Virus record (IMG/VR): IMGVR_UViG_3300037882_001770
Coordinates: 253,494 to 317,493 of that record
DNA: 64,000 bases
Direction: 5' to 3' (one strand)
This document shows, piece by piece, positions 38,491-61,154 of the stretch (position 1 is its first letter; every line of letters starts with the position of its first letter). The translations under genes were made by a program, and so were the position numbers. The notes beneath the pieces are model-generated. The model was not told the origin of the DNA, did not search any database, and saw only the letters and a program-made list of their open reading frames with translations.

Positions 38491-38496
38491 ATTTAC

Positions 38497-38562
38497 AGCG
38501 GCCTTTTGGTGTCACCCCGCTTTACAAATTCTGCCACCTATGCTATAATCTAACATAGGAGA
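38497..38562 (+). promoter_or_regulatory. Candidate cis-regulatory RNA in queD leader
   Basis: AGCGG/CCGCT stem, loop TGGTG pairing with TGCCA, then CCTATG/CATAGG stem covering the SD. Confidence 0.5.
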
Positions 38563-38568
38563 AATACA

Positions 38569-39093: not shown

Positions 39094-39122
39094 AAATTAA
39101 GATTTATTTGCTTAAGGACTAA

Positions 39123-40016
39123 ATGACAAGACCGTTTAAAATTGCAGTATTGTTACCCACTCGTGGAAGGACTGATGCCTTGGCTCGTAGTATCATTAGC
39201 CTGTTTAATCGAGCTGTGGACAAAAGCAGCATTCAGTTGATGATGATTTTTGATCACGACGACGATATAGGGTATGGATACTTTGAAAGAAAAATTCGGC
39301 CTTGGCTGGACGATCACGAAATCGACTATACTGCACTCGGAGTCGACAGCATGGGGTATGAGGGTCTTAATCGTTATTACAACACTATGGCAGAATCATG
39401 TGATGCTGATTGGTTTTTTATCTGGAACGATGATGCTATCATGGAAACTACTGGCTGGGATCAAATAATTACCAAAAACACAGGCGAATTTAAGCTGTTG
39501 GCTGTACGCACACACAACGATCATCCTTACAGTATTTTTCCTATTATTCCTCGTGAGTGGTACGATCTATTTGGCTTGTTGAGCCGTCATCAGATGATCG
39601 ACGCAGAGTTTAGTCAGCTTGCATACATGCTCAATATATTTGAACGAGTAGATATTTTTGTTACCCACGACCGTGCAGACCTCACCGGCAACAATGCCGA
39701 CGAAACTGACAAAAAACGTGTGAGATTCGAGGGCAATCCAGAAAATCCGCATGACTTTCATCACACTCTCTACTCTAAGCAACGTCTTGTTGACGCAGAA
39801 ACCATAGCACAATATATGAAGTCAATTGGCATGGACGTAGAATTTTGGACCAATGTCAAGGCTGGCAAACAGTATCCATGGGAACAACTGATCAAAAATG
39901 ACACTAACAAACAGATGAGACAATTTGGCGTAACAGTAGATCCTGTCACAAACAAAGTGGTTGCTATCAAACCAGACGATCATGCAAACATAGTAAGGCA
40001 ACAAAATGAATCTTGA
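39123..40016 (+). CDS. GT-A glycosyltransferase
   Basis: LLPTRGR, DHDD, WNDDA motifs. Confidence 0.7.
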   Translation: MTRPFKIAVLLPTRGRTDALARSIISLFNRAVDKSSIQLMMIFDHDDDIGYGYFERKIRPWLDDHEIDYTALGVDSMGYEGLNRYYNTMAESCDADWFFIWNDDAIMETTGWDQIITKNTGEFKLLAVRTHNDHPYSIFPIIPREWYDLFGLLSRHQMIDAEFSQLAYMLNIFERVDIFVTHDRADLTGNNADETDKKRVRFEGNPENPHDFHHTLYSKQRLVDAETIAQYMKSIGMDVEFWTNVKAGKQYPWEQLIKNDTNKQMRQFGVTVDPVTNKVVAIKPDDHANIVRQQNES

Positions 40017-41241
40017 TATCATTACCAGTAAAAAAATTGATCAGTGCTTGATTACCAGTTTGCCAGTTACTAAAGTTTTAGATTTTGGTCAGCATTCTTA
40101 TGCTGATACTTTTATTAGCCAAGATCAATATCATCTCAGCGAGCCAGTGTTTCCTTTACAGGTCATGCTGTGTCCAGATTCAGGCATGATACAGTTAGGA
40201 TATGTCAGCAACGCCGAAGCAAGATATAATTTATACAGCTACAGTTACACTTCCAGTAATAGCAAAACTGCAAGAGATCATTGGGATCGTTATGCCGCCA
40301 CTATTAAAAATACCTACGGGGTCAACGGACTAGTTGTTGAGATTGGCAGCAATGACGGATATCTAATTGGACAGTTTAATGGCGAAGCTACCACAGCACT
40401 TGGAGTTGACAGTAGCAAAGAAATGTGTCGTCTTGCCAAGAACAAAGGAGTCGAAACAGTACACGGATTATTTGATTTCGGTACTGCCCAGTCTCTAAAA
40501 AACACACATGGCACAGCAAAAATTATTATGGCCAATAATGTGTTTAATCATGCCAACGACCCGCTGGCATTTGCCAAAGCAGTTGGCGAATTGTTAGACC
40601 CAGAGTCAGGTGTATTTGTATTCGAAGTGCCATACTGGCTCAGTATGGTCCAAAGTGGCCGCTTTACAGATATGGTCTATCACGAACATCCTAGCTATTT
40701 TACAGTAAAGAGTCTTTGGAATTTGCTTAAAATTGCAGGGCTAGAAATTACAGATTATCAAATAGTAGACTACCATGGCGGAAGTCTGAGAGTACATGCT
40801 CGTTGTGATACTGGTGCAGACATGCCAGACTTGATTACCCATGCAATACTTCAAGAACACGTAGCTGGAATATTCCTGCCAGAGTTTTATCAAAATCTTC
40901 AAAGAAAATTTGAATTGCAACGAGCTGAATGGTTGTATAATTTTAATCAGATTTACATGACCGATCCCGATGCTGTGTTTATTGGCATTGGTGCAGCCGC
41001 AAAAGCAAACACCTGGCTAACCTGGCACGGCCTCAATGCTACCCACTTGCATTGTATTACCGACGCTAGCGAATACAAGCAAGGCAAATACACCCCGCTG
41101 AGTAGAATTCCTATTTTAGGCGACAACGAGTTTGCCAATCATCCGGCTCCGTATGCGTTGATTTTAAGTTGGAATATTAGCGAAGGCCTCAAGAAATCCA
41201 TACTAAATATCAACCCCAACACAAGGTTTATTTCACAATGA
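40006..41241 (+). CDS. NDP-sugar C-methyltransferase
   Basis: EIGSNDG, NVFNH, YHEH, HGGSLR, GAAAKANT, KQGKYTP motifs. Confidence 0.85.
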   Translation: MNLDIITSKKIDQCLITSLPVTKVLDFGQHSYADTFISQDQYHLSEPVFPLQVMLCPDSGMIQLGYVSNAEARYNLYSYSYTSSNSKTARDHWDRYAATIKNTYGVNGLVVEIGSNDGYLIGQFNGEATTALGVDSSKEMCRLAKNKGVETVHGLFDFGTAQSLKNTHGTAKIIMANNVFNHANDPLAFAKAVGELLDPESGVFVFEVPYWLSMVQSGRFTDMVYHEHPSYFTVKSLWNLLKIAGLEITDYQIVDYHGGSLRVHARCDTGADMPDLITHAILQEHVAGIFLPEFYQNLQRKFELQRAEWLYNFNQIYMTDPDAVFIGIGAAAKANTWLTWHGLNATHLHCITDASEYKQGKYTPLSRIPILGDNEFANHPAPYALILSWNISEGLKKSILNINPNTRFISQ

Positions 41242-41645
41242 AACACTACAATATTCACAGCAACCAAGAGCCTGGTCTAGGTGTACATCAAGACGATCGC
41301 GGTACCATTGCAGATATTTTTTATAAATTAAATGTAAATCACGGTTGTTTAATCAGCAATGCTCCCGGAGCAGTGCGTGGCAATCATTATCACAAATTAA
41401 CAACACAGTACACCTTTATTGTAGCCGGCAGTTTGGAATACTATAGCAAATCTGTCGACAGTGACAAGCCAGCTCAAGTGCTATCAGCAAAGGGCGGGGA
41501 TTTTATTATTAGCGAACCAAACGAGATCCATGCACTCCGCGCTGGCGCACAAGGGTGTGTGTTTATAGCATTTGCTGAAGGCCCTCGTGGTGGTGAAGAC
41601 TACGAAAATGACACATTTCGAGTAGACTCAATTATTCCACAATGA
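41238..41645 (+). CDS. Cupin (NDP-sugar isomerase/epimerase-like)
   Basis: DDRG, VRGNHYH, PNEIH. Confidence 0.7.
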   Translation: MKHYNIHSNQEPGLGVHQDDRGTIADIFYKLNVNHGCLISNAPGAVRGNHYHKLTTQYTFIVAGSLEYYSKSVDSDKPAQVLSAKGGDFIISEPNEIHALRAGAQGCVFIAFAEGPRGGEDYENDTFRVDSIIPQ

Positions 41646-42235
41646 AAAAAACTGTAGCGATTTTTGGAGCAAGTGGCGGCATTGGACGAGCTGTTAGGCA
41701 AGCCTTCCTGGATGCCGAATACACAGTTATTCCGGTCAGTCGTACCTTGATTGATTTTGCCGGTACTGATGCTGAACGTCAAATACAAGAATTTTTAAGT
41801 TTATCCACACCGGATGTAGTGGTCAACTGCGTTGGAAAGTTTAGCAACAATGACGAGCCAGCCGGCCCACTCATGAACATAAACTTCAACAGCAATTGGG
41901 CAATAGTTCAACACTATTTAAAAAATCCACAGCCGGTTAGGGTTATTATTGTTGGGTCAAGTGCATACAAATCTGGCAGAAAAGATTACATGGTGTACAG
42001 CGCCAGCAAGGCTGCCCTATACAACCTATGGCAAGGTGCAAGAGATACGTTTGCTGAAACCGAAGTACGAGTCGACTTAGTTAATCCTGTAAGAACTCGT
42101 ACCAAAATGGTTGAACCATTTAACACAGAACTAGATTATCTGGAGCCACAAGAAGTTGCAAAATGTATTTTACAATTGGATCAATGGAACGATCCCAGCA
42201 GATGCGTAGACATAACTTTTAAGGATGCAAAATGA
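41642..42235 (+). CDS. SDR oxidoreductase
   Basis: GASGGIG and YSASK. Confidence 0.8.
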   Translation: MKKTVAIFGASGGIGRAVRQAFLDAEYTVIPVSRTLIDFAGTDAERQIQEFLSLSTPDVVVNCVGKFSNNDEPAGPLMNINFNSNWAIVQHYLKNPQPVRVIIVGSSAYKSGRKDYMVYSASKAALYNLWQGARDTFAETEVRVDLVNPVRTRTKMVEPFNTELDYLEPQEVAKCILQLDQWNDPSRCVDITFKDAK

Positions 42236-43005
42236 AAATAGGATTATTAGGACGCGGTACTGTAGGCAAAGCTGTCTATGAAGGGCTGGAATATCTAGGC
42301 CACGAAATGAGTTTCTTTGACCCAGCCTACGAAGGCTCACACATTGAGGACGTGCTGTCAACTGACTGTGTGTTTATTTGTGTACCGACTGATCAGGCAG
42401 CCAACGGCGACTGTGATACCAGTATTGTAGACCGTGTGGTCAAAGATCTTGCTGAACGCAATTATACTGGATTGGTATCTATTAAAAGCACAGTAGTTCC
42501 TGGGACCACCGAGCGTCTACAAAAAACCTACCCTGAGTTAAGATTAAGCATGGTTCCAGAATTTTTACGTGCTAAAAGTGCATTGGCTGATTTTGTATAC
42601 AATCATGACCTATTAGTTGTGGGCTGTAACAACAAAGAGGATGCGGAACTTCTAGTAGAAATCCACGGAAGTTTTCCTGAAAACATTGCTCGTGTAAGTC
42701 CTACTGAAGCCGAAGTGATCAAATATTTTAACAACGTACATCATGCTATGAGTGTGACCTTTGCCAACATCACATATGATGTATGCGACAAGCTAGGCGC
42801 CAACTATATGAATGTGTACAAGGCCATTACCAAACGTGAATGCATCAATCCTCATTACCTAATGGCCAATCCGAACATGCGAGGATACGGCGGGCATTGT
42901 TTGCCAAAAGATACCAGCGCATGGAACAACTTGATTCAAAATTTAGGATTAGACTTTGGATTAATTCAAGCAGTAATCAACGACAACGAGAAATTTAACA
43001 AATGA
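42232..43005 (+). CDS. UDP-glucose/GDP-mannose dehydrogenase family (short form)
   Basis: GRGTVG, CVPT, IKSTVVPGT, PEFL, GYGGHCLPKD; lacks C-terminal domain. Confidence 0.85.
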   Translation: MKIGLLGRGTVGKAVYEGLEYLGHEMSFFDPAYEGSHIEDVLSTDCVFICVPTDQAANGDCDTSIVDRVVKDLAERNYTGLVSIKSTVVPGTTERLQKTYPELRLSMVPEFLRAKSALADFVYNHDLLVVGCNNKEDAELLVEIHGSFPENIARVSPTEAEVIKYFNNVHHAMSVTFANITYDVCDKLGANYMNVYKAITKRECINPHYLMANPNMRGYGGHCLPKDTSAWNNLIQNLGLDFGLIQAVINDNEKFNK

Positions 43006-51505: not shown

Positions 51506-51874
51506 GTGCGAGACAAAAAGAAATTAACTGCTGCTCTAGTTGAACAACTGGATCCGGAGTTGGGTCTTAACTGTGAGCATGCTTACAACACTTGGTGGCA
51601 CAATCTTCGTAACAACGGCGGCATGCGCTTGACCGCTGCAGGATATCGGGCATTTCAAGATCTGTTAAAAATTGAATACTATGTGTTTAATTTAAAACCA
51701 TTTGATATCAATTCAAAATTGATAGTGTCTATGGATCGTAAATTACAACAACCCTACTACATTGTCACTAAAAAAATGATACCCGTACAGTTGATGTTTT
51801 TTGGCAGTCGCGAAGCAATGATGGTAAATTTATATGGCGATTTAAAAAAGTTCATTGACAATTACACTCCATAG
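51506..51874 (+). CDS. Hypothetical phage protein
   Basis: GTG start; GGMRLT motif. Confidence 0.55.
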   Translation: MRDKKKLTAALVEQLDPELGLNCEHAYNTWWHNLRNNGGMRLTAAGYRAFQDLLKIEYYVFNLKPFDINSKLIVSMDRKLQQPYYIVTKKMIPVQLMFFGSREAMMVNLYGDLKKFIDNYTP

Positions 51875-51883
51875 TGTTACACT
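51855..51883 (+). promoter_or_regulatory. Sigma70-like promoter for transporter island
   Basis: TTGACA-N17-TACACT with TG extension. Confidence 0.5.
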
Positions 51884-51931
51884 ATCAACTGCGGTATTGT
51901 TATCATGCGCCGCCACCATTTTAGGAAAAAT

Positions 51932-53116
51932 ATGTACACCGTCGAACAAAATGACAAGCTGGGTTTTTATCAATTTGGAGATAAGAAATTCCACAACAAA
52001 GTAACTGCGTTAATTGAAGGAACCAAAGCCAACCAATTTCCAGAATGGAATTTCAACAAACAAGTATTTGATCAAACCAATTGGACTGTAGAACCCCCAG
52101 CAGGACTGCAAGAGTTGTATAGACTGCGGGCACTACAGTTGCGCGAACAGTACGACTATATTAGACTAGAGTGCAGTGGTGGCGGGGATTCGGCCACTGT
52201 GGCCTACAGTTTTATCAACAACGGAATACACCTGGACGAAGTGATCTTTAGATATCCCAAAACTGGTGAAAAGAATGCCACTGATGATCCGTTCAATACC
52301 AAACCCGAAAATACCCTCAGTGAATTTCGCTTTGCAGCCAAGCCCCTGTTGCAGTGGATTGCAGACCATAGTCCTGCTACCAAAATTGTCATACACGACT
52401 ACAGTGAGGACATGCTCAAAAGCCAACACGATGAATCCTGGGTGTTTAAAACTAGAGATTATTTTCAGCCCGGGCACCCATTCAAACACACAGTAGATGC
52501 CTTGGATGATCACAAGCGTACCTTGGATCAAGGGCGCAGGGTCTGCATGCTGTGGGGTGTTGACAAGCCCAAGATCTGCATCAAAGACAAAAAATGGTAT
52601 GTGTATTTTATGGACGTGCAGGCCAATGCAGCCAATCCCGACACGGCGGGCTACAGCAACATCACCAATGAATATTTCTTCTGGACTCCGGATCTGCCCG
52701 AGCTGTTGGTCAAACAAGCACACATGATCAAGAACTGGTTTGACCTCGAAAGCAACAAGCATCTACAACACTTGGTACGCTGGCCCAACTACAGCTTTAC
52801 ACAACGCACAGCCTTTGAACACATTATCAAACCGTTGATTTATCCTGACTATGATCAGACCACATTTCAAACTGCCAAACCCACCAACAGCTTTTACAAC
52901 GAAATGGATCATTGGTTTTATACCAATTTTCAAGAAACACATGCGTACCGCACATGGAAAGCTGGACTCAATTTCTTGACCAGCAATATAGATCCCAAGT
53001 ATTTCAACAATGAAATGGGACGTCCTGTGGGCTTTGTGGGCTTTATCAGTCCGTTTTATTATCTGGGTGATGCACATTTTGAAGATCCCGGTACCAATTT
53101 ACACTTTAAATTTTAA
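51932..53116 (+). CDS. PP-loop (adenine nucleotide alpha hydrolase-like) protein
   Basis: SGGGDS motif; paralog of 59358-60476; AGGA RBS. Confidence 0.65.
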   Translation: MYTVEQNDKLGFYQFGDKKFHNKVTALIEGTKANQFPEWNFNKQVFDQTNWTVEPPAGLQELYRLRALQLREQYDYIRLECSGGGDSATVAYSFINNGIHLDEVIFRYPKTGEKNATDDPFNTKPENTLSEFRFAAKPLLQWIADHSPATKIVIHDYSEDMLKSQHDESWVFKTRDYFQPGHPFKHTVDALDDHKRTLDQGRRVCMLWGVDKPKICIKDKKWYVYFMDVQANAANPDTAGYSNITNEYFFWTPDLPELLVKQAHMIKNWFDLESNKHLQHLVRWPNYSFTQRTAFEHIIKPLIYPDYDQTTFQTAKPTNSFYNEMDHWFYTNFQETHAYRTWKAGLNFLTSNIDPKYFNNEMGRPVGFVGFISPFYYLGDAHFEDPGTNLHFKF

Positions 53117-53118
53117 CA

Positions 53119-54417
53119 ATGGAGTTGTTGATCTTATTAACAGCTGGGTTAGTGACCGGCATACTGATTGGTTTGTTCCCGGTATTTCCTGTGTACGCTG
53201 GTGCATTTATTCTTTACTTGACCAGCGGCCTGTGGACTCCAGAACAGATGCTGTTGTTTTGGATTGTGGCCAGCATCGGCAGCCAATTTTTTGCCAGTGT
53301 TAGTGCTATTACACTGGGCATACCAGGCGATGCCAGCAGTTTGGTCTATATAAAAGATGTTAAAAAATTATCACTGTTGGAACGCAATCAACTGCTGTGG
53401 TTGACCAGTCGTGGTAGTTTAATCAGCGGCATAATAAGTTTGGTCTTGGTCTGGGTGTTGTACTATGTGTACACCGCAACCGGTCAAACATTTTTGTTTT
53501 CCATTGAAGCCAAATTGCTATTACTGTATTCAGTTATATTTTTCTTTATTGTCACTAGCCAGCAAAAAATACTCACACTACTGTTAAGTATATTTGGTGT
53601 GTTGATTTCTCCGCAAAACAATTACAGTTTGCCCAGCGAATGGTTTCATTTTTCAACCTTGTTTCAAAATACCACATTCTTTATGCTGATATTGGCATTA
53701 ATGATGATTCCCGACATGCTGAATTATCGCACACTACAAATAGATAATAAAAATCAATATTCTACAATTCCGTCGCAGATGCCCTGGTGGTTGATATTAA
53801 AAAATTCCATACTGGGCTGTTTGGTAGGCTTGATCCCAGGCCCGGCTGCAGAGGTGGCTGCATCAGCTGCTTATTCGTCTACTAGAACAAAAAATACCAG
53901 TTTAAAAATTGTAGCTGCCGAAACTGCCAATAATCCCGGGGTGGTCATGATGATCTTGCCGTTGTTGTTGTTGGGTCTGCCTTTTACTTCCAGCAGTTTG
54001 ATAGTGAGCAATATCATGGACAGCAAAATGGTCGCGTTGCCCGAGCTGGCCAGATCAGCCAGCACAATTGTCACAGGATTTACTGTGTTTGATGTCATGA
54101 TCATTATGGCTGTCATGACCACAGTCATTTATTATGCACTGAGTATACAGTTTATTAATGTTTATACCCGACTGGTCAGTTCTGCATATGACAAATTTAA
54201 ATGGGCAATGATTGTGCTGGTGTTGGGTATGGTCGGCGCCGACATATACATACAAGAAATATCCTGGCTGGCCTATGCAACTCTGCTAATTTTTTATATT
54301 GCTGTAGGTCAGGTACTAAGGCACTTTCGCGTCAGCCCAGTGCCCATGATATTTGTGTATTTGTTAGGAGATCAGTTGATCTGGGCCACCGGCCAATTTT
54401 TAGCCATACACTTTTGA
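53119..54417 (+). CDS. Tripartite tricarboxylate transporter TctA-like permease
   Basis: ~12 TMs; repeated G..P, LGIPG, GLIPGP, AAETANN motifs. Confidence 0.75.
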   Translation: MELLILLTAGLVTGILIGLFPVFPVYAGAFILYLTSGLWTPEQMLLFWIVASIGSQFFASVSAITLGIPGDASSLVYIKDVKKLSLLERNQLLWLTSRGSLISGIISLVLVWVLYYVYTATGQTFLFSIEAKLLLLYSVIFFFIVTSQQKILTLLLSIFGVLISPQNNYSLPSEWFHFSTLFQNTTFFMLILALMMIPDMLNYRTLQIDNKNQYSTIPSQMPWWLILKNSILGCLVGLIPGPAAEVAASAAYSSTRTKNTSLKIVAAETANNPGVVMMILPLLLLGLPFTSSSLIVSNIMDSKMVALPELARSASTIVTGFTVFDVMIIMAVMTTVIYYALSIQFINVYTRLVSSAYDKFKWAMIVLVLGMVGADIYIQEISWLAYATLLIFYIAVGQVLRHFRVSPVPMIFVYLLGDQLIWATGQFLAIHF

Positions 54418-54433
54418 CCGTATAAATATTCCT

Positions 54434-54545
54434 GCAACGCCGGGTTCTTCCGACGTGGGATTTCAACAAGACGCTTGACATACGGATGTCTTTACTGTAT
54501 TATTAATACAGAACGCCTGCCCTGAGTAGAGCTCTTCTACTAGCA
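54434..54545 (+). ncRNA. Structured leader motif, copy 1 (candidate riboswitch)
   Basis: After TATAAATA; conserved linkers and four hairpins shared with 55427-55532. Confidence 0.65.
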
Positions 54546-54574
54546 TTAAAATTCATTAACTTAAAGGAAATTAA

Positions 54575-55405
54575 ATGAAACTTCGATTCATCGTGGCCTC
54601 TATATTGGCCGTAGCTGTATCCACCGCATCCGCTGATGTGATTGTCAACAACAGCAACAAAGCCAGTCCTGGCACAGTGGTAGCAAAAACATTTGAAACA
54701 GCAGTGGGCACCAACAAGATTGACTTCTTTCAAGCCAATACGTGTGAAGAGGCACAAGCAAAATTTCAGTCTAGTAAAAATGCAGTAATGATTTACAATG
54801 CCGACGTTGGAATTGCAGCCCTGGGCAAAGGATTAAAATGCCCACTGACAGCCAAACCAGAACAAACTGTGTTCATTGGAAAAAGCTATTTAAAAGTGTG
54901 TACCAGTGCCAAAGCGCCCAAAACACTAGAACAGGCCAAAACCATTGGCGCTGCCAGCGTTATTCTGAGCAAAGGACTTGTTGAGGACTACAACAGCAAT
55001 GGATTAAATCTCAAAGGTGTTCCCTACGGTGGCAGCGTAGGTGTATTGGGCGGACTGATCGCCGGTGACATCGATGTGGGCTTTGTGGCCAGCAGCATTG
55101 CCGATCCTGCAATCGAATCCGGACAAATCACTTGTGCATTGAGTACCGATCCGCGTCGTGCAGATTATGTGGCCAACAAGTACAAGTTAAAAGTACCGTC
55201 CATGCCCATTGTCAAGGTATTCTACACCAACACCGACAATCCTGCATTTATTTCTGAGTTGCAAGCTGCCGTAAAGAAAGAAGAGTTTCAGGCATTTTTA
55301 GCAAAAGCCAAATACGATGATGTCAAAACTGGTAAAATTACACAAAAAGACCTTGATGCAGTGCAAAACTACATTACAGATTCGTATAACTACTACTGGA
55401 AATGA
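54575..55405 (+). CDS. Periplasmic solute-binding protein (TctC/Bug-like)
   Basis: Signal peptide ending ASA; VPYGGS...LIAGDID motif; follows TctA. Confidence 0.65.
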   Translation: MKLRFIVASILAVAVSTASADVIVNNSNKASPGTVVAKTFETAVGTNKIDFFQANTCEEAQAKFQSSKNAVMIYNADVGIAALGKGLKCPLTAKPEQTVFIGKSYLKVCTSAKAPKTLEQAKTIGAASVILSKGLVEDYNSNGLNLKGVPYGGSVGVLGGLIAGDIDVGFVASSIADPAIESGQITCALSTDPRRADYVANKYKLKVPSMPIVKVFYTNTDNPAFISELQAAVKKEEFQAFLAKAKYDDVKTGKITQKDLDAVQNYITDSYNYYWK

Positions 55406-55426
55406 TCTAGGAGATAAATAAAACTA

Positions 55427-55532
55427 GCAACGCCGGGTCCCGACGTCGGAATTAACTGACGCTTACAGTAGATACTGTTTTACTAGTGTGATACACTAGA
55501 ACGCCAGCCGTAGCAGAATTGTTCTGCAAGCA
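55427..55532 (+). ncRNA. Structured leader motif, copy 2 (candidate riboswitch)
   Basis: After ATAAATA; same linkers as copy 1 with different but still pairing stems. Confidence 0.65.
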
Positions 55533-55561
55533 ACAAATTAAATTAAACAGGAGTTCATTAA

Positions 55562-56518
55562 ATGAGCAAAACTACTAAAATCCGTTGGGTAATCGCACAC
55601 GAGCCATTGAGCCTTTTTGTACGTGCGGCGCATGATTTTGAAAAAGAAATCAACGCTCAACAAACAGCAGAAAAAATTGAAATTGAAGTAATGACACTGA
55701 GCGAATACAGTGCCAAATATAACAACGGTGTTATGGTCACCAAACACGATTTGTTAGATTTGATGGAACAGGGCAAAATTGAAATGAGCCAAATGTACAC
55801 CACTTGGTTGGCTGAACATTATGAAAATGATTTCTTGGCTTTTGAAATGCCTTACATTTTCAGCGATCACGAGCATGCTAGCCGTGTGTTGGAAGGCGAA
55901 GTTGGTGAAACACTATTGGCCAAACTCACAGACAACAGCAATGTACGTGGACTTGCTTACACATACTCAGGCGGTTTCCGTTGTTTGGGTGTAAACAAGC
56001 CAGTGAGCACCCTAGCTGATTTAACTGGTGAAAAACTACGTTCAAACCGTAACCCGGTGGGCCGTGCAGTGATCCGCACTATGAGTGGTGTTGAGCCATT
56101 TATTTGCGAAACTGAAGAAGCACGGGAACACGTTGCTCGTGGTGATTGCAACGGCAATGACACAGTTTACAGCCGTATCTATCCATTGAGCCAAAATGAC
56201 GTAATTCAGTCAGTGGTAGACAGCAAGCACAGCTTGTTCCTGACCACAATGATCATTGGTGATCGCTTCTGGGACAGCCTCAGCTCAGAAGTACGTGCTG
56301 TGATCAAGACGGCTGCTATCCAAGCTGGTCGCAACGAAAGAACCACTACCATTGAAGATGGTCAGCAAGCTCGCGCTCGTTTATTAAGCGAAGGCAAGAC
56401 AGTGTATGAGCCTACCGCAGAAGAAACAGCGGCAATGAAAGCTCGCATGCAGGTAGTATATGATGAATTTGAAAATTCATTTAGCGACAATCTAATCAAT
56501 CGTATTAAAACAGCCTAA
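55562..56518 (+). CDS. TRAP transporter solute-binding protein DctP-like (no signal peptide)
   Basis: FEMPYIF, GFR, DLTGEKLR, FWDSLS motifs; AGGAG RBS. Confidence 0.8.
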   Translation: MSKTTKIRWVIAHEPLSLFVRAAHDFEKEINAQQTAEKIEIEVMTLSEYSAKYNNGVMVTKHDLLDLMEQGKIEMSQMYTTWLAEHYENDFLAFEMPYIFSDHEHASRVLEGEVGETLLAKLTDNSNVRGLAYTYSGGFRCLGVNKPVSTLADLTGEKLRSNRNPVGRAVIRTMSGVEPFICETEEAREHVARGDCNGNDTVYSRIYPLSQNDVIQSVVDSKHSLFLTTMIIGDRFWDSLSSEVRAVIKTAAIQAGRNERTTTIEDGQQARARLLSEGKTVYEPTAEETAAMKARMQVVYDEFENSFSDNLINRIKTA

Positions 56519-56536
56519 TTGGCATGAAGTATCAAT

Positions 56537-56569
56537 AAAACAAGCACTGCTGGTCAGTGCTTGTTTTTT
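56537..56569 (+). terminator. Intrinsic terminator
   Basis: AAAACAAGCACTG / CAGTGCTTGTTTT stem with T-tract. Confidence 0.8.
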
Positions 56570-56635
56570 GTCATAAATTATGGCACTGCTGGTTGCGCCA
56601 TTAAATAGTAATATCATCTTTATTCTTTTTCCATT

Positions 56636-57919
56636 ATGAATTCATCTAAATCTTCTACTACACGTACAGTAGCGGCCAGCACCGTCGGCACCATTTTTGA
56701 ATGGTACGACTTTGTTATTTTTGGCTTGGCCACTGTGTTGGTTTTTAATAAACTATTTTTTCCCAATATAGATCCAGCATTGGCCTTGGTAGTTTCAATG
56801 TTGGCCTATGCTGTGGGCATTGTGGCCAGACCCTTGGGTGGCCTAATTTACGGTGCCATCGGCGATCGCTACGGGCGCCGACGCATGTTGGTGGCCACCA
56901 TGCTGATCATGGGTGCCAGTACCTTTGCTATAGGTCTGTTGCCTACCTATAGCACCATTGGCGTATGGGCTCCTATCATGCTAATTGTGCTGCGTATTGT
57001 ACAGGGCATTGGCATCGGCGGTGAATGGGGCGGAGCCAGTGTGATGATTCAAGAATCTGCACCAGATCATCAGCGTGGCTTTTATGCCAGTTTTATACAG
57101 ACCGGACTACCTGCGGGCATGCTGATGGCATCGGGTGTGTTTGCTGCGTTGACCACTGTGTTGACCGAAGCTGAATTCCTAAGCTGGGGATGGCGTATTC
57201 CATTCTTATTGAGTGCAGTGTTGGTGCTGATAGGCACAGCAATTCGTTATCAAATTCCAGAAACTCCGGTCTTTTTAGCCATGAAAAATGTTTCTAAGTC
57301 GCCCATACGCGATCTTTTTGTCAAGCATCCCAAGACCTTGTTAAAAGGCATCGGTCTTAAAATAACAGAAAGTGTGTGGTTCTTTATAGTCACAGGATTT
57401 ATAGTAGGCTATGCTGTTACCAATTTTGCTATACCTCGTGGAGATCTTTTAAAGATAATCATGGTCAGCAATGCCATCAGTATAGTGTGGGCCCTGGCCA
57501 TGGGCTATCTGTCAGACCAGATAGGTCGCAGAGCCATTTTCTTTTTTGGTGCGGCATTTACTGTCGTAATGCCATTTCCTATCTTTTACTTGGTCAGCAC
57601 CGGAGATTTTTATCTAATTGCAGTGGCCATGATTGCGGGGCAATGCATTGGCAGTACCACTATGTTTGCTGTGTTGAGCTCGTATCTACCTGAAATATTC
57701 CCAGCTGAAGTTCGTAGCACAGGAGCCAGCTTGAGTTTTCAAATAGGAGCAGCCATAACCGGAGGCCTGGTACCGGTATTAGCGGCCTGGGCGGTGGGTG
57801 TTTGGGGCACCAATTATGCAGTGTCCTTATTGATGATGCTGTTTGGCTTGATCACATTTGTCACTGTGCTCAATACCAAAGAAACTTATCAAACATCAAT
57901 GACGCAATTAAATGATTAA
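56636..57919 (+). CDS. MFS transporter, metabolite:H+ symporter (MHS) family
   Basis: EWYDF, RPLGG, GDRYGRR, GGEWGG, WGWRIPF, PETP motifs. Confidence 0.9.
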   Translation: MNSSKSSTTRTVAASTVGTIFEWYDFVIFGLATVLVFNKLFFPNIDPALALVVSMLAYAVGIVARPLGGLIYGAIGDRYGRRRMLVATMLIMGASTFAIGLLPTYSTIGVWAPIMLIVLRIVQGIGIGGEWGGASVMIQESAPDHQRGFYASFIQTGLPAGMLMASGVFAALTTVLTEAEFLSWGWRIPFLLSAVLVLIGTAIRYQIPETPVFLAMKNVSKSPIRDLFVKHPKTLLKGIGLKITESVWFFIVTGFIVGYAVTNFAIPRGDLLKIIMVSNAISIVWALAMGYLSDQIGRRAIFFFGAAFTVVMPFPIFYLVSTGDFYLIAVAMIAGQCIGSTTMFAVLSSYLPEIFPAEVRSTGASLSFQIGAAITGGLVPVLAAWAVGVWGTNYAVSLLMMLFGLITFVTVLNTKETYQTSMTQLND

Positions 57920-58742
57920 TACCTTTGCAGATAAACCTGAATTCATTGGTACAGATCCTAGACAGCGTAGACCTGCCCATTGGCAATACACTGTGACCGC
58001 TGAATTAATGACTCAGCGTCATGATGTGTTTTTTAAAAAGGCCCAGTTGGCAGGCGCCAGAGTATTGGACCTGGGATCGTGTTGTGCAGCCACTGGCGCA
58101 TGGGTGTTAGATCGTGGTGCAGATCACTATACCGGAGTTGAATTACAAGAAAAATTCGTTGCCAGTGCTAGAAACAATTTACAACAGTATTATCCAGCCG
58201 ATCGCTGGAGCATAGTACAAAGTGATCTAGAACAGTACATAGACCGTTGTGAACAGGAGTTTGACGTAGTGTTACTGGCCGGTGTGTTACACTGTTTGTT
58301 TGATTATCATAAAATACTGCGCAAATTGACCAGTATTTCACAACAGATCATCATTGAATGTTTCCACCCGTATAATGGTCTTCGAGATCTTTATCCAGAA
58401 CTTGACAATGATCAGCGTTATGCATTGTGTCAGCAGTTGAGTCTGGCCCAGATAGCGGCTGAAACCGGCACCGCAGGTGAAAATGGTGGCAGTTGGGTAT
58501 TTGACGGAGTCAGACTCAGCATGGCTGCCACGCAAAATGTGTTTGGATATTTGGGTTGGCAAACCGATTTAGAATTGAATGATTATGCCATAGCTCAATT
58601 GCCCGAAGTATACAGCATGGCCACTCCCAGCTACTGCCCTAGATATGTGGTACAGGCGGTCCCGGGCCAACGCACTGTGTTTGAATTTGCCGACGGCTAT
58701 GCCGATCCTAAACAAAGCAATTATGAATACAAAAACTGGTAG
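57912..58742 (+). CDS. Class I SAM-dependent methyltransferase
   Basis: VLDLGS, GVE, FDVV..AGVLH. Confidence 0.75.
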   Translation: MINTFADKPEFIGTDPRQRRPAHWQYTVTAELMTQRHDVFFKKAQLAGARVLDLGSCCAATGAWVLDRGADHYTGVELQEKFVASARNNLQQYYPADRWSIVQSDLEQYIDRCEQEFDVVLLAGVLHCLFDYHKILRKLTSISQQIIIECFHPYNGLRDLYPELDNDQRYALCQQLSLAQIAAETGTAGENGGSWVFDGVRLSMAATQNVFGYLGWQTDLELNDYAIAQLPEVYSMATPSYCPRYVVQAVPGQRTVFEFADGYADPKQSNYEYKNW

Positions 58743-59361
58743 TTGGCAATTTGACGCAGGGGTGGCCAGCACGTTTGTTGCACATGCTCGCCAACACATA
58801 CCCAACTATGATCTGGTCATCAACAAATGTGTGGACTTGGTCAACAATAAGTTAGGACAGTTTGATCGCATAATTGATGTGGGATGTGCCACTGGTGAAA
58901 CCATTCGTAGATTGCATACAGCTGGCTTTTTGAATTTGACCGGTGTAGAAGCCAGTGCAGCCATGCTGAGTCACTGTGATCGTAACATTGCTAGACTTAT
59001 CCACAGCGATCGTTTTCCGCAGGAAACCTTTGATGCTGTGCTTTGCAATTGGACCTTGCATTTTGTTCCGGACAAAATGAAATATCTTGCGGATATCTAT
59101 GCCAATTTGTCCAAATCGGGCTTTATGGTTCTAAGCGACAAAACCAGTTTGGATCCTGTCTGCATCGATCATTATCATAAATGGAAACACAGTCAAGGTG
59201 TTGCTTGGCCCGACATCTTGGCCAAAGAAGCCGCAGTAAAAGGAATTATGTATATAGACTCGCCTGAGTGGTATATAAATGCACTGACACAAGTGGGATT
59301 CAGCAACGTTCGAATAATTGATGCCAGCTGGTGTTTTACAACCTTTTTATGCACAAAATGA
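58723..59361 (+). CDS. CmoA-like SAM-dependent methyltransferase
   Basis: WQFD..VA..F..H..QHIPNY, DVGCATG, NWTLHF, LSDK. Confidence 0.7.
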   Translation: MNTKTGSWQFDAGVASTFVAHARQHIPNYDLVINKCVDLVNNKLGQFDRIIDVGCATGETIRRLHTAGFLNLTGVEASAAMLSHCDRNIARLIHSDRFPQETFDAVLCNWTLHFVPDKMKYLADIYANLSKSGFMVLSDKTSLDPVCIDHYHKWKHSQGVAWPDILAKEAAVKGIMYIDSPEWYINALTQVGFSNVRIIDASWCFTTFLCTK

Positions 59362-60476
59362 TCAAACCCTTTTATGCCTACGGTTATTATCAAGTGGGCC
59401 ATAATGATTATGTCAAAAAGACCGACGCACTAGTTGCGGCTACAAAAAGTCGGTTGCCAGTACACTGGAACTTTCACGACGATGTTTATTCAGCAGCTGA
59501 TTGGACTCGGCGGCCAGCAGGCACTCTTAAAGACCTGTACCGCATCAGAGCACAACAACTGCGTGATCGTTACGACTATATTGTGATTCATTTCAGCGGT
59601 GGCGCAGACTCCTGGACTGTGCTCAACAGTTTTTTAAGCAACAACATACCGGTAGACGAAGTGTACACACGCTGGGCCAGAGCTGAACGCAAATACACAA
59701 AGGCCAATGCAGCAGATCGTAGAGAATGCAATTTAAGCAGTGAATACGAGTATGCCACCGAGCCAGTATTAAAAGAAATACAAAAGAAATTCCCCAATAC
59801 TCGCATACATGTGGATGATTATTCAGATGCTTACACAAAAGAAGTAAATGAAAAGACCTTAGAGACCAGCAGTCATTATATCACCATGGGCACCTTTCAT
59901 AGATTTACTAGAAAATCACCAGGTGAATTGGCTGCAGTGGCTGCCGGCAAACGTGTGGGAGTGATCTACGGTTTTGACAAGATACAGTGTAATCTAACAC
60001 AGGGCCGATTCAGTGCGTATTTTGTAGATCGTTTTGGCAGTACCGACATTGATCCTGAGCGCACACAGGAAGGATTTTATTGGACACCAGACCTGTCAGA
60101 AATTCCCATCATGCAGGCACATGATTTACGCTTGTATTATCAGACCATTGTGGATCGCGTACAGAGTCGACAACTGAACCCACGCGAATGCTTTATACGT
60201 ACCTGCTATGCCGATTACAATTTAAACACATTTCAAGTGGAAAAACCTCTGGGCAGCAAGGTCTGGGCCAGTGAACAGTGGATTCAAAAGTACAATCCAC
60301 GCTATGCAGAATCCTGGGAATGGGCCCTGGGTCAATATACCCACAACATTGACAATGCATATTATGAGTTTTTTGGCAACAAGATCAAACTGGGCTACAA
60401 GACCATGCGTAGTCCGCTGTACTATGTGGGGCCCATTGCAGGTGCAGAACAGTTGAATTTTGAGTTTTCACACTGA
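59358..60476 (+). CDS. PP-loop (adenine nucleotide alpha hydrolase-like) protein
   Basis: FSGGADS; LY..RA.QLR..YDYI shared with 51932-53116. Confidence 0.65.
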   Translation: MIKPFYAYGYYQVGHNDYVKKTDALVAATKSRLPVHWNFHDDVYSAADWTRRPAGTLKDLYRIRAQQLRDRYDYIVIHFSGGADSWTVLNSFLSNNIPVDEVYTRWARAERKYTKANAADRRECNLSSEYEYATEPVLKEIQKKFPNTRIHVDDYSDAYTKEVNEKTLETSSHYITMGTFHRFTRKSPGELAAVAAGKRVGVIYGFDKIQCNLTQGRFSAYFVDRFGSTDIDPERTQEGFYWTPDLSEIPIMQAHDLRLYYQTIVDRVQSRQLNPRECFIRTCYADYNLNTFQVEKPLGSKVWASEQWIQKYNPRYAESWEWALGQYTHNIDNAYYEFFGNKIKLGYKTMRSPLYYVGPIAGAEQLNFEFSH

Positions 60477-60502: not shown

Positions 60503-60673
60503 ATGGAACAGAACAAAAAACCCGTAGACAAGTTTTTTTACTCTGCCAAAGAGTGGGACCGTTTGGGCTGTGGCCCGTTGCCGACAGAACGTGATCGCGG
60601 TCAAATACATCAAGACGCTCATGCAAAAGGTAATCCTAAGATTGACGGCAAAGCTGTAAAAGGGTATAATTAA
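60503..60673 (+). CDS. Small hypothetical protein (56 aa, not in ORF track)
   Basis: ATG 4 nt after TAAATA; MEQNKKPVDKFFYSAKEWDRLGCGPLP... Confidence 0.5.
   Translation: MEQNKKPVDKFFYSAKEWDRLGCGPLPTERDRGQIHQDAHAKGNPKIDGKAVKGYN
60642..60670 (+). promoter_or_regulatory. Sigma70-like promoter for tmRNA
   Basis: TTGACG-N17-TATAAT. Confidence 0.65.
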
Positions 60674-60748
60674 CTTAGTTTTGCATTTTGATCAAAATGC
60701 ATGGTGGGTCGGACTGTTAGAATGTAGTAGTAAAGAATTGTTGTAATT

Positions 60749-61095
60749 CCTTCGTAGTGAAGGCGTTGTGGACCCGGGTTCGATTCCCGGCAGGTCCACC
60801 ATAAGGAGATTGACATGGATCAAGAAGCTGTATTAGTAGTCGCATTTCTACTGATAGGACTATTGTTTGTCTTTTTATGATGGGCCTGACATGGTCTCGA
60901 CATGGCGAGATAGCGAAAGAGGCAACACAGTAGGCGATGACTGTAAATCAAGCAAATTATGTAAATGCAAAAACATCTACAGGCGAAACTACTGTATCAG
61001 GTAAGAACATCAAGTTCTCTGCTCGTACAGCACAACGCCAATCATTAGCAGTTTAATCACTGCTTAGGGTAATTATACCTCGTAACAGAAAATAG
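60749..61095 (+). ncRNA. ssrA: Permuted (two-piece) tmRNA; outer ends approximate
   Basis: T-arm CCGGG-TTCGATT-CCCGG and CAGGTCC-A-CCA (ends 60801) precede 5' strand GGGCCTG (60882); 7-bp acceptor stem with G3:U70; CATGGCG/CGTTGTG helix; tag frame 60967-61056 starts GCA and ends LAV-stop. Confidence 0.88.
60815..60880 (+). CDS. 21-aa hydrophobic peptide ORF in tmRNA intervening segment
   Basis: TAAGGAG SD; MDQEAVLVVAFLLIGLLFVFL. Confidence 0.45.
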   Translation: MDQEAVLVVAFLLIGLLFVFL

Positions 61096-61096
61096 T

Positions 61097-61123
61097 AGAA
61101 CCCGCTTCGGCGGGTTTCTTTTT
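61097..61123 (+). terminator. Intrinsic terminator after tmRNA
   Basis: AACCCGC-TTCG-GCGGGTT plus T-tract. Confidence 0.85.
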
Positions 61124-61154
61124 GGCAAATTAAAATATCATGGTAAGTAAACGC

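What the first reader, a model, noticed from the sequence alone, without database searches (positions are those of the whole stretch)
51932..60476. Transporter island bracketed by two PP-loop paralogs
Seen: PP-loop, TctA, TctC-like, DctP, MFS, two methyltransferases, PP-loop. Three transporter classes, two incomplete (no TctB, no DctQ/M), interspersed with late-promoter cores and the duplicated RNA leader. Inference: a phage module importing or sensing a small organic acid and modifying it (adenylation, methylation); multi-transporter cassettes are unusual in phages.
Basis: partly seen in the sequence, partly recalled or inferred. Interest (0 to 1): 0.6.

Follow-up and report, generated by a model that had tools for sequence, protein, structure and literature searches.

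The report
Phage carboxylate-uptake genes with shared RNA leader
An uncultivated giant phage carries intact transporter parts, binding proteins and ATP-using enzymes for small organic acids, and two of the binding-protein genes sit behind a conserved folded RNA leader, absent from Rfam, that in related phages precedes mostly uptake genes.

Summary
The gene list is correct. Window 51905-60476 encodes, all on the + strand: a PP-loop enzyme, TctA, a secreted TctC-fold protein, a DctP-family protein, an MFS symporter, two SAM methyltransferases and a second PP-loop paralog. All are intact and under purifying selection. The 317-kb record has no TctB, DctQ or DctM.

It is not one syntenic island. 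It is three separately conserved cassettes in a variable region of a T4-core jumbo phage.
- (A) PP-loop gene, then a late-type promoter core plus a ~110-nt structured leader, then binding-protein genes. DctP is present in 37 of 53 related loci.
- (B) A TctA + TctC-like pair, which lies in other contexts elsewhere.
- (C) MFS + two methyltransferases, found elsewhere as the same trio.

Two corrections change the interpretation.
- The DctP protein and all its phage relatives lack a signal peptide. It is a cytoplasmic carboxylate binder, not an orphan periplasmic TRAP subunit.
- The "duplicated leader" is a real RNA family absent from Rfam. It has 87 distinct copies in viral contigs, none confirmed in the cellular genomes tested, and strong covariation. 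About 70% of the genes it precedes are uptake genes: TctC, DctP, TctA, ABC binding proteins, a porin.

Best reading: a phage-encoded, RNA-leader-controlled set of genes for carboxylate uptake, capture and ATP-dependent modification. Substrate, host and the leader's input are unknown.

The parts
51855..51883 (+). sigma-70-like promoter match (TTGACA, 17 nt, TACACT with TG) 22 nt upstream of g1
   Evidence: Consensus scan only, 10 of 12 positions matched. Function not shown.
51905..53116 (+). g1: AsnB-type PP-loop ATP pyrophosphatase (synthetase domain only, 403 aa)
   Evidence: SGGGDS at residues 91-96. No Pfam or NCBIfam hit. AlphaFold pLDDT 86. VIA-align Z 11.5 to E. coli AsnB and 9.3 to beta-lactam synthetase. 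53 related viral loci at 62-84% identity.
53119..54417 (+). g2: TctA-family permease (432 aa); starts 2 nt after g1's stop
   Evidence: PF01970, E 4e-29, profile positions 1-422 of 423. About 10 hydrophobic segments. 51-56% identical TctA genes sit next to g3-like genes in L056-L061.
54421..54428 (+). TATAAATA, a T4-type late-promoter core, 5 nt before leader copy 1
   Evidence: The only exact TATAAATA in the window. An xTAAATA core lies at this distance in 69 of 71 distinct leader copies.
54431..54547 (+). structured RNA leader, copy 1 (upstream of g3)
   Evidence: Covariance-model hit of 86.5 bits. Carries compensatory changes in P1, P2, P3, P4 and the CGG/CCG helix relative to copy 2.
54575..55405 (+). 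g3: secreted TctC/Bug-fold solute-binding protein (276 aa)
   Evidence: N-terminal signal peptide, residues about 1-20. AlphaFold pLDDT 91. Foldseek top hits are MatC, TctC 4x9t, Bug27 and TphC. Four invariant Cys across the family.
55414..55420 (+). ATAAATA late-type promoter core before leader copy 2
55424..55534 (+). structured RNA leader, copy 2 (upstream of g4)
   Evidence: Covariance-model hit of 110.4 bits.
55562..56518 (+). g4: DctP-family binding protein without signal peptide (318 aa), predicted cytoplasmic
   Evidence: PF03480, E 5e-41. No hydrophobic N-terminus, and no upstream extension of the frame is possible. All phage homologs start the same way. The GFR arginine (R140) is nearly invariant.
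56538..56569 (+). intrinsic-terminator-like hairpin plus T run after g4
   Evidence: Read directly from the sequence: an 11-12 bp stem, a 5-nt loop and a run of six T. The consensus scan did not list it.
56636..57919 (+). g5: MFS metabolite/H+ symporter (427 aa)
   Evidence: TIGR00883, E 8e-116. Next best are ShiA, ProP and TcuC models, all below their curated cut-offs. phrog_2034, E 3e-56. 74% identical in L062 and L063.
57912..58742 (+). g6: class I SAM-dependent methyltransferase (276 aa); overlaps g5's end by 8 nt
   Evidence: Methyltransf_12/25/31/11. 65% identical and in the same position in L062 and L063.
58723..59361 (+). g7: CmoA-like SAM enzyme. The ORF opens at 58645; the likely start is the ATG at 58723.
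   Evidence: TIGR00740 CmoA, E 3e-19, 69.7 bits against a cut-off of 193. Best PDB hits are CmoA 1im8 and 4gek. phrog_4752, E 1e-35. Start read.
59358..60476 (+). g8: second PP-loop paralog. The ORF opens at GTG 59331; the likely start is ATG 59358, which overlaps g7's stop as ATGA.
   Evidence: 30% identical to g1, E 3e-51, motif SGGADS. Second hit of the family profile in the genome. Start read.

Best explanation
The stretch is a variable (accessory) region of an uncultivated ~317-kb T4-core jumbo phage. Three independently conserved cassettes have accumulated there between two paralogous AsnB-type PP-loop genes.

- **Cassette A, the lineage-wide core.** A PP-loop enzyme gene is followed by a late-type promoter core and a ~110-nt structured 5' leader. 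The leader drives solute-binding-protein genes: here a secreted TctC-fold protein (g3) and a signal-less, cytoplasmic DctP-family protein (g4).
- **Cassette B.** The TctA permease pairs with the TctC-like protein. It has no TctB.
- **Cassette C.** An MFS metabolite/H+ symporter and two SAM-dependent methyltransferases are tightly packed (overlapping or abutting reading frames). Here the last one is coupled to the second PP-loop gene.

**Likely working (inferred).** During infection the phage adds its own uptake parts for carboxylates to the host envelope: the secreted binding protein, TctA and the MFS. The cytoplasmic DctP-like protein captures a carboxylate through its retained arginine. The PP-loop enzymes adenylate a carboxylate for amide or ligation chemistry. 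The leader RNA places the binding-protein genes under a common control. In related phages the same control covers TctA, ABC binding proteins, a porin and PP-loop paralogs. The input could be a metabolite (riboswitch-like) or a phage or host RNA-binding protein.

**Shown:** gene identities, folds, localisation signals, conservation, cassette structure, RNA structure and its gene associations.

**Inferred:** substrate class, direction of flux, enzyme chemistry, and what the leader senses.
For: **Identities and folds:**

**Phage type:** Gp23 major capsid hit, E 9e-99. The flap endonuclease is 52% identical to that of phage PA5oct.

**Cassette A**
- A g1 homolog occurs in 53 viral loci.
- DctP is present in 37 of the 53, and TctC-family genes lie beside it in most.

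**Cassette B:** TctA + g3-like pairs lie in other neighbourhoods in L056-L061 and L033.

**Cassette C:** the same trio at 74/65/67% identity in L062 and L063.

**Tight packing:** g1/g2 are separated by 2 nt. g5/g6, g6/g7 and g7/g8 overlap.

**Localisation**
- g3 has a signal peptide and four invariant Cys.
- g4 and about 40 homologs have no signal peptide.

**Carboxylate link**
- R140 of g4 aligns with the TRAP binding-protein arginine and is nearly invariant. That arginine is conserved in 96.8% of the family (PMC5812351).
- The closest folds to the PP-loop enzymes are carboxylate-adenylating enzymes.

**RNA**
- The model finds 48 + 54 hits, 87 of them distinct.
- 93.9% of cells are paired. 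17 of 24 pairs carry compensatory changes. 0 of 500 shuffles reach the observed values, and slid controls score 0.11 or less against 0.46.
- The P4 hairpin is present in 33 of 42 distinct copies, with many different stems.
- A promoter core lies 5-6 nt upstream in 69 of 71 copies.
- Downstream genes are DctP, TctC, TctA, SBP_bac_8, a porin and PP-loop paralogs, with a minority of others.
- The genome has only two copies, both before binding-protein genes.

**Selection:** purifying on all eight genes.
Against: - No substrate, host or expression data exist. No RNA run holds the region.
- The three cassettes are not linked outside this genome, so a common pathway across all eight genes is unproven.
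- The leader also precedes unrelated enzymes: a Trp-halogenase-like protein, TauD, a desaturase, an acyltransferase and DUF2061 proteins. This fits a general accessory-gene leader as well as a regulon.
- No expression platform (terminator or anti-RBS pairing) was found in the leader.
- The PP-loop/DctP complex prediction gave no answer.
- TctA without TctB has not been shown to work in bacteria.
- The promoter core suggests late expression, which is an odd time for nutrient import.
Confidence: 0.5

Rival explanations
1. The stretch is a mosaic of unrelated auxiliary genes. It is simply a hyperplastic region where cassettes pile up. The promoter-plus-leader unit is a mobile regulatory cassette, comparable to the PeSL elements of T4-type phages. 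It serves general expression and recombination, so co-location implies no shared pathway.
For: - The cassettes occur separately elsewhere.
- Gene order around g1 varies a great deal between relatives.
- The leader also precedes unrelated enzymes.
- PeSL elements are known to mediate shuffling in variable regions of T4-like phages (PMC2839356, PMC4122927).
Against: - About 70% of leader-associated genes in the survey that was not anchored on the PP-loop gene are uptake components, and nearly all in the anchored one. That is far above what accessory phage genes in general would give.
- The 317-kb genome has only two copies, both before binding-protein genes.
- The junction sequences are invariant and four helices covary. 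This indicates selection on a specific RNA fold, not only on homology for recombination.
- PP-loop + DctP/TctC adjacency holds over 62-84% protein identity.
Confidence: 0.25
2. The cytoplasmic DctP-like protein is a sponge or enzyme rather than a transport partner. It would sequester or convert a host small molecule carrying a carboxylate, for example a signal or a defence-related metabolite. The secreted TctC-like proteins would similarly titrate or sense periplasmic ligands instead of feeding a permease.
For: - There is no signal peptide and no DctQM anywhere in the record.
- Most relatives carry TctC-family genes without TctA.
- The family is very abundant and strongly conserved: 1180 hits in the protein collection.
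- Cytoplasmic proteins with a binding-protein fold acting as enzymes are known (for example MqnA and MqnD; from memory, not tested here).
Against: - No defence or counter-defence genes were identified nearby.
- Orphan TctC proteins that use a chromosomal TctAB are well known in beta-proteobacteria (PMC5812351), so a missing TctA does not argue against transport.
- This window and L033 do carry TctA next to these genes.
Confidence: 0.12
3. The enzymes serve macromolecule modification, not metabolism of an imported acid. The PP-loop paralogs would amidate sugar uronic acids of a phage-made glycan, or modify tRNA or nucleic acid together with the CmoA-like enzyme. The transporters would be unrelated neighbours.
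For: - The fold list includes an N-acetyl-sugar amidotransferase, TilS, MnmA and TtuA.
- The window holds a sugar-nucleotide cluster with a UDP-glucose/GDP-mannose dehydrogenase, and PIG-L and DUF6492 genes just downstream.
- g7's best solved relatives are CmoA.
- g7 and g8 are translationally coupled.
- A tmRNA gene lies 200 nt downstream.
Against: - The PP-loop genes are adjacent to binding-protein genes, not to glycan or tRNA genes, across 53 loci.
- g7 scores far below the CmoA cut-off. The residue aligned to the arginine that I recall as contacting carboxy-SAM is Glu (the role of that arginine is from memory).
- The record has no TGT/DpdA.
Confidence: 0.13

Closest known systems
Tripartite tricarboxylate transporter (TctABC) and orphan Bug/TctC proteins of beta-proteobacteria
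   Same: A TctA permease gene lies next to a secreted binding protein with the TctC/Bug fold. Many relatives carry TctC-family genes without any permease, like the orphan Bug proteins (PMC5812351).
   Different: It is encoded by a phage. There is no TctB anywhere in the record. g3 is too divergent for Pfam TctC. The gene order is tctA-tctC, with a structured leader between the two genes.
TRAP transporter binding protein DctP
   Same: Pfam and NCBIfam DctP family. The full domain is present and the conserved carboxylate-binding arginine is retained.
   Different: There is no signal peptide in any phage homolog, and no DctQ or DctM. It is therefore predicted to be cytoplasmic and not part of a TRAP system.
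Asparagine synthetase B / beta-lactam synthetase / carbapenam synthetase (AsnB-type PP-loop synthetase domains)
   Same: SGGxDS PP-loop motif and the best structural matches: Z 11.5, 9.3 and 8.6.
   Different: There is no N-terminal glutaminase domain and no detectable sequence-family membership. The family appears confined to viruses, with two to three paralogs per locus.
Phage-encoded binding proteins used as auxiliary metabolic genes (for example cyanophage PstS; from memory)
   Same: A phage supplies a periplasmic binding protein that could work with a host membrane transporter.
   Different: The families differ (TTT and TRAP, not ABC phosphate). The set is accompanied by a permease, an MFS, a cytoplasmic binder and adenylating enzymes, and is preceded by a dedicated RNA leader.
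PeSL mobile promoter/stem-loop cassettes of T4-type phages (PMC2839356, PMC4122927)
   Same: A short conserved regulatory unit precedes variable genes in a variable region of a phage with T4-type core genes.
   Different: PeSLs are early-promoter plus terminator stem-loops. This element has a late-type core, about 110 nt, four covarying helices and a long-range helix, and invariant junctions. It shows a strong bias to uptake genes.
Riboswitches that control transporter and binding-protein genes
   Same: 5'-leader position, conserved junction nucleotides flanked by covarying helices, and one element in front of several unrelated uptake gene families.
   Different: No ligand is known. No recognisable expression platform was found. 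No Rfam family matches. It was found only in viral contigs.

Membership tests
PP-loop ATP pyrophosphatase superfamily (adenine nucleotide alpha hydrolases) | SGGxDS/T pyrophosphate-binding loop after the first strand of a Rossmann-like fold | tested here: met
   g1 has SGGGDS and g8 has SGGADS. S91, G92, G93 and D95 are invariant in 29 family members. The fold matches AsnB, TilS, NAD and GMP synthetases and LarE.
Asparagine synthetase B (class II glutamine amidotransferase) | N-terminal Ntn glutaminase domain with catalytic Cys at position 2, fused to the synthetase domain | tested here: not met
   g1 is 403 aa, against about 550 for AsnB. It starts MRRHH, without Cys2. Only 288 residues align to AsnB. 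There is no PF00733 or PF13537 hit.
QueC (7-cyano-7-deazaguanine synthase) | Match to PF06508 above its cut-off, plus a 7-deazaguanine pathway context (QueD, QueE, TGT/DpdA) | tested here: not met
   Only 6 of 29 members give weak QueC hits; the best E is 0.017. No TGT is present. The one PTPS-like gene sits in a sugar-nucleotide cluster 13 kb away.
Tripartite tricarboxylate transporter (TTT) | TctA large membrane subunit | tested here: met
   PF01970, E 4e-29, 101.9 bits against a cut-off of 28.9, full-length match.
Tripartite tricarboxylate transporter (TTT) | TctB small 4-TM subunit | tested here: not met
   No PF07331 match at E <= 0.1 in the 317-kb record. TctB is poorly conserved (PMC5812351), so a divergent analogue cannot be excluded.
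Tripartite tricarboxylate transporter (TTT) | Secreted TctC binding protein | tested here: met
   g3 has a signal peptide. Its predicted fold matches TctC/Bug structures best, E 3e-12, TM 0.57-0.64. A profile search of PDB sequences finds only a TTT binding protein, E 0.004. Pfam TctC itself is not matched.
TRAP transporter | DctP-family binding protein that is exported to the periplasm | tested here: not met
   The domain is present (PF03480, E 5e-41). There is no signal peptide or hydrophobic segment in g4 or in about 40 phage homologs.
TRAP transporter | DctQ and DctM membrane subunits | tested here: not met
   No PF04290 or PF06808 match in the record.
MFS metabolite:H+ symporter family (TIGR00883) | Score above the curated family cut-off | tested here: inconclusive
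   387 bits against a cut-off of 443. The ShiA, ProP and TcuC models are all well below their cut-offs. General MFS membership is clear.
CmoA (carboxy-SAM synthase) | Equivalog-level match and the residues that hold carboxy-SAM | tested here: not met
   TIGR00740 scores 69.7 bits against a cut-off of 193. The closest solved relatives are CmoA, but Glu stands at the position aligned to the arginine I recall as the carboxylate contact (that role is from memory).
Riboswitch | Conserved, covarying structure in a 5' leader | tested here: met
   17 of 24 pairs carry compensatory changes and 93.9% of cells are paired. Shuffled and slid controls score far lower. A promoter core lies 5-6 nt upstream. 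The caveat is that the alignment was fitted to the model.
Riboswitch | Direct ligand binding and a ligand-dependent expression platform | not testable with these tools
   No terminator or anti-RBS pairing was seen after the element. Ligand binding needs in-line probing or ITC.
PeSL mobile regulatory cassette | Early sigma-70 promoter combined with a terminator stem-loop, flanking swapped genes | tested here: not met
   The conserved core is xTAAATA (late type), not a -35/-10 pair. A sigma-70-like match lies inside copy 1 only. The helices are not followed by T runs.

The most novel reading that the evidence does not exclude
The ~110-nt leader is a new riboswitch class confined to a lineage of freshwater jumbo phages. 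It would sense a carboxylate-type metabolite and switch on a phage-encoded uptake and capture regulon: porin, TctC and ABC binding proteins, TctA, a cytoplasmic DctP-like binder and AsnB-type ligases. The signal-less DctP family would be a new kind of cytoplasmic ligand-capture protein working with the PP-loop enzymes.
Probability: 0.25. Interest if true: 0.85.

Novelty: new variant of a known kind. Interest (0 to 1): 0.66.

Why it matters
Phages are known to carry single nutrient-uptake helpers. A set that combines an outer-to-inner uptake chain, a cytoplasmic binder and adenylating enzymes under one dedicated RNA leader has not been described in the papers and libraries searched here.

The leader is a testable new RNA family. 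It has 87 distinct copies, clear covariation and a coherent set of downstream genes.

The signal-less DctP family has more than a thousand metagenomic relatives. It offers a tractable case of a periplasmic binding fold reused inside the cell. Ligand screens on g3 and g4 could name the compound these abundant uncultivated phages compete for.

Tried and rejected
- **Rfam.** Gathering and E-value modes found nothing for the leader.
- **GenBank phage collection.** There was no DNA match for the island and no tblastn match for g1. DctP gave only weak hits of about 23% identity.
- **Close TctA and g7 relatives in viral contigs.** Peptide-pattern scans found none. Relatives turned up through other routes.
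- **Leader in cellular genomes.** None is real by the covariance model; the best score is 18 bits, E 0.16.
- **RNAalifold's CGUC/GACG helix.** Rejected. Seven sequences give C.A mismatches there, whereas the same positions covary perfectly as an extension of P1 (A:U 35, G:C 7).
- **7-deazaguanine (QueC-like) reading of the PP-loop genes.** Rejected. There is no TGT, and the PTPS-like gene lies in a sugar cluster.
- **PP-loop + DctP complex prediction.** Score 0.08, below the mark. This is no support and no evidence against binding.
- **Public sequencing runs.** Only small shares in freshwater and other metagenomes, and none on record as RNA.
- **Literature.** Searches for phage TRAP/TTT binding proteins or a matching RNA motif found nothing relevant.

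Full report
**Setting**

The window is the last 64 kb of a 317,493-bp linear IMG/VR viral record, estimated 89% complete.
- The record encodes a T4-type major capsid protein (Pfam Gp23, E 9e-99).
- Its flap endonuclease is 52% identical to that of Pseudomonas jumbo phage PA5oct.
- Neither the island DNA nor the g1 protein has any match among 50,697 GenBank phage records.
- The phage therefore belongs to an uncultivated jumbo lineage with T4-type core genes.
- The only sequencing runs that hold part of the region are metagenomes. The best is a freshwater one, and all hold small shares.

**Observation check**

Eight + strand ORFs fill 51905-60476.
- Pfam and NCBIfam confirm TctA, DctP, an MFS metabolite/H+ symporter and two class I SAM methyltransferases.
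- The three ORFs without family hits were resolved otherwise.
  - g1 and g8 are paralogs (30% identity, E 3e-51). They carry SGGGDS and SGGADS.
  - A family alignment of 29 members keeps S-G-G-x-D invariant.
  - The g1 model (pLDDT 86) matches AsnB best: Z 11.5 over 288 residues. Next come human ASNS, beta-lactam synthetase, TsnB9 and carbapenam synthetase, and then generic PP-loop enzymes.
  - g3 has a clear signal peptide. Its model (pLDDT 91) matches TctC/Bug structures first.
- The whole record has no TctB, DctQ or DctM, and only these two PP-loop paralogs.
- All eight genes are open. Non-synonymous differences from relatives (pN 0.05-0.33) are far below synonymous ones (pS 0.50-0.86).

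**Operon layout**

- g2 starts 2 nt after g1 ends.
- g5/g6 overlap by 8 nt. g6/g7 overlap. g8's likely ATG overlaps g7's stop as ATGA.
- g3 and g4 each have their own upstream unit.
- A strong hairpin with a T run follows g4.
- The region thus reads as four units: [g1-g2], [leader-g3], [leader-g4-terminator] and [g5-g6-g7-g8].

**Synteny**

A scan of viral contigs with g1 returned 53 loci at 62-84% identity. Mapping all island and flanking genes on them shows a conserved frame: flap endonuclease ... u1, then the PP-loop gene, then a variable stretch, then the small ORF d1 and so on.
- DctP is present in 37 of the 53 loci, usually directly after the PP-loop gene.
- TctC-family genes with signal peptides (Pfam TctC positive) lie beside DctP in most loci, in either order.
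- Extra PP-loop paralogs (up to three in tandem) are common.
- TctA appears in only one of these loci (L033). The MFS and methyltransferases appear in none.
- Homologs of g3 (26 clusters, none annotated) lie directly after a 432-434-aa TctA in quite different neighbourhoods. These include DNA polymerase B, DNA ligase, and saccharopine dehydrogenase plus aldehyde dehydrogenase.
- The MFS + g6 + g7 trio recurs with the same overlaps in a 288-kb contig (L062 and L063).

The island is therefore three cassettes, each conserved on its own. Only cassette A is lineage-wide.

**The DctP protein is cytoplasmic**

- g4 starts MSKTTKIRWVIAHEP. There is no room for an upstream extension of the frame and no hydrophobic segment.
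- All homologs in related loci, down to 36% identity, start in the same way.
- The family is large: 1180 hits in the protein collection, the top 120 all about 318 aa.
- The arginine of the GFR motif (R140) aligns with the arginine of solved TRAP binding proteins and is nearly invariant in the phage family. That residue holds the ligand's carboxylate and is conserved in 96.8% of the family (PMC5812351).
- The missing DctQM is thus explained. This is not a transporter subunit but an intracellular carboxylate binder.
- A structure-based test of binding to g1 gave no answer.

**The leader RNA**

- The two copies (79% identical) share invariant blocks separated by hairpins that differ by compensatory changes.
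- A covariance model built from 12 copies found 48 hits in 0.93 Mb of related loci. All are on the gene strand and directly upstream of an ORF.
54 of the 80 candidates tested were true hits, at 52-112 bits.
- 87 distinct copies are in hand.
- The revised structure has these parts:
  - an extended P1, in which A:U (35 sequences) switches to G:C (7 sequences) at one pair;
  - a long-range CGG/CCG helix that encloses P2 and P3, with two independent compensatory events;
  - a P4 hairpin in the long form (33 of 42 copies, with many different stems).
- Overall, 93.9% of cells pair and 17 of 24 pairs show changes on both sides. No shuffle of 500 reaches the observed values. Slid controls score 0.11 or less against 0.46.
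- The alignment was fitted to the model, which favours the structure. The slid controls and the many pair types argue that the signal is real.
- The junctions GCAACGCC, GACGUCGGA, GACGCYU and GAACGCC..CCGUA are nearly invariant.
- An xTAAATA core lies 5-6 nt upstream in 69 of 71 copies.
- In this genome ATAAATA is strand-biased (34 on + against 7 on -). 27 of the 34 lie 10-200 nt before a + strand ORF. That fits a T4-type late promoter, so the fold would sit at the very 5' end of the transcript.
- No Rfam family matches.

**What the leader precedes**

- In the loci anchored on the PP-loop gene it precedes DctP or TctC-family genes almost without exception.
- In the pattern-based set, which is not anchored on any gene, it precedes:
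  - DctP (9) and TctC-family proteins (about 16);
  - TctA (3), ABC-type SBP_bac_8 proteins (3) and a Gram-negative porin;
  - PP-loop paralogs (5);
  - a minority of other genes: a Trp-halogenase-like protein, TauD, a desaturase, a hexapeptide acyltransferase and DUF2061 membrane proteins.
- The 317-kb genome has just two copies, both before binding-protein genes.
- This bias to uptake components is the strongest evidence that the PP-loop, TctA, TctC and DctP genes belong together functionally.

**Mechanism**

I take the region to be a phage-encoded set for uptake, capture and ATP-dependent modification of one or more small carboxylates, with the binding-protein genes under the leader's control.

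Shown:
- identities and folds;
- export signals, or their absence;
- cassette conservation;
- RNA structure and its gene associations.

Inferred:
- that the secreted proteins feed TctA or a host TctAB, as orphan Bug proteins do (PMC5812351);
- that g4 holds the imported or a host carboxylate;
- that g1 and g8 adenylate it;
- that the leader responds to a metabolite or to a protein.

The methyltransferase link is the weakest. g7's nearest solved relatives are CmoA, but it scores far below the CmoA cut-off. It has Glu at the position aligned to the arginine that I recall as the carboxy-SAM contact.

**Rivals**

- A functionally unlinked mosaic with a PeSL-like mobile promoter cassette (PMC2839356, PMC4122927).
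- A sponge or enzyme role for the cytoplasmic binder.
- A glycan or RNA modification role for the enzymes. The window holds a sugar-nucleotide cluster, and PIG-L/DUF6492 genes and a tmRNA gene lie close by.
- The host is unknown. The permuted tmRNA scores above Rfam's beta-proteobacterial threshold, and orphan TctC proteins abound in beta-proteobacteria (PMC5812351). Both are only hints.

**Novelty and verdict**

- Phage-borne binding proteins are known as a kind.
- New here are the TTT/TRAP/MFS combination, the signal-less DctP family next to virus-only AsnB-type enzymes, and above all the dedicated structured leader.
- I rate this a new variant of a known kind, interest 0.66.
- There is about a one-in-four chance that the leader is a new riboswitch class.

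Noticed in passing
window 60687-61147 (+): Phage-encoded permuted (two-piece) tmRNA gene. It scores 118 bits on tmRNA_permuted and 112 bits on beta_tmRNA, above the gathering score. ARAGORN predicts an unusually long tag peptide ending in LAV. It is a possible clue to a beta-proteobacterial host.
   Followed up: partly
L006, L007, L008, L017, L023, L025, L026, L029, L050, L054 (for example L006:11353-12305): In ten related loci the DctP gene is split into two adjacent ORFs of about 157 and 160 aa in different frames. Both halves are well conserved (about 76% and 57% identity to g4). This could be a fixed frameshift, a programmed frameshift or a two-piece protein.
   Followed up: no
window 37910-43005 (+): A sugar-nucleotide modification cluster: HIT protein, PTPS/QueD-like protein, sugar C-methyltransferase, cupin, short-chain dehydrogenase/epimerase and UDP-glucose/GDP-mannose dehydrogenase. 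An 836-aa FG-GAP repeat protein lies just upstream (35415-37925).
   Followed up: partly
whole record G000; window 54422, 55414, 56601, 60492: ATAAATA is strongly strand-biased (34 on + against 7 on -). 27 of the 34 lie 10-200 nt upstream of a + strand ORF, against about a third for control heptamers. It is probably this phage's late-promoter core. The exact T4 consensus TATAAATA is rare (8 on +, 2 on -).
   Followed up: partly
window 54475-54503 (+): A near-consensus sigma-70 promoter (TTGACA, 17 nt, TATTAT; 11 of 12) lies inside leader copy 1, over P2 and P3. It is not conserved in the other copies. In this copy a second, internal start may exist.
   Followed up: no
L056:5770-6027, L057:1496-1753, L058:5455-5712: A small Phage_DsbA-like gene follows the TctC-like gene in three loci. 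The g3 family has four invariant cysteines. This suggests disulfide-bonded periplasmic proteins that come with their own oxidase.
   Followed up: no
L059:6216-9954 (also L060, L061): In another phage context the TctA + TctC-like pair sits directly after saccharopine-dehydrogenase-like and aldehyde-dehydrogenase genes. This is a possible hint at the kind of compound handled.
   Followed up: no
L242:8801-10000, L254:384-2021, L222:414-1454, L201:6811-7854: In related viral contigs the same leader precedes a Gram-negative porin, a tryptophan-halogenase-like flavoenzyme, a TauD-family dioxygenase and a fatty-acid-desaturase-like protein.
   Followed up: partly
L018, L023, L024, L025, L026, L050 (for example L025:12124-12228): A short form of the leader lacks the CGGA block, the CGG/CCG helix and P4. 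It runs straight into the ribosome-binding site of a DctP gene. This is a natural minimal variant, useful for dissecting function.
   Followed up: partly
window 60503-60673 (+): A small conserved ORF (56 aa; 60-86% identical in 11 related loci) marks the downstream edge of the variable region. No family match was found.
   Followed up: no
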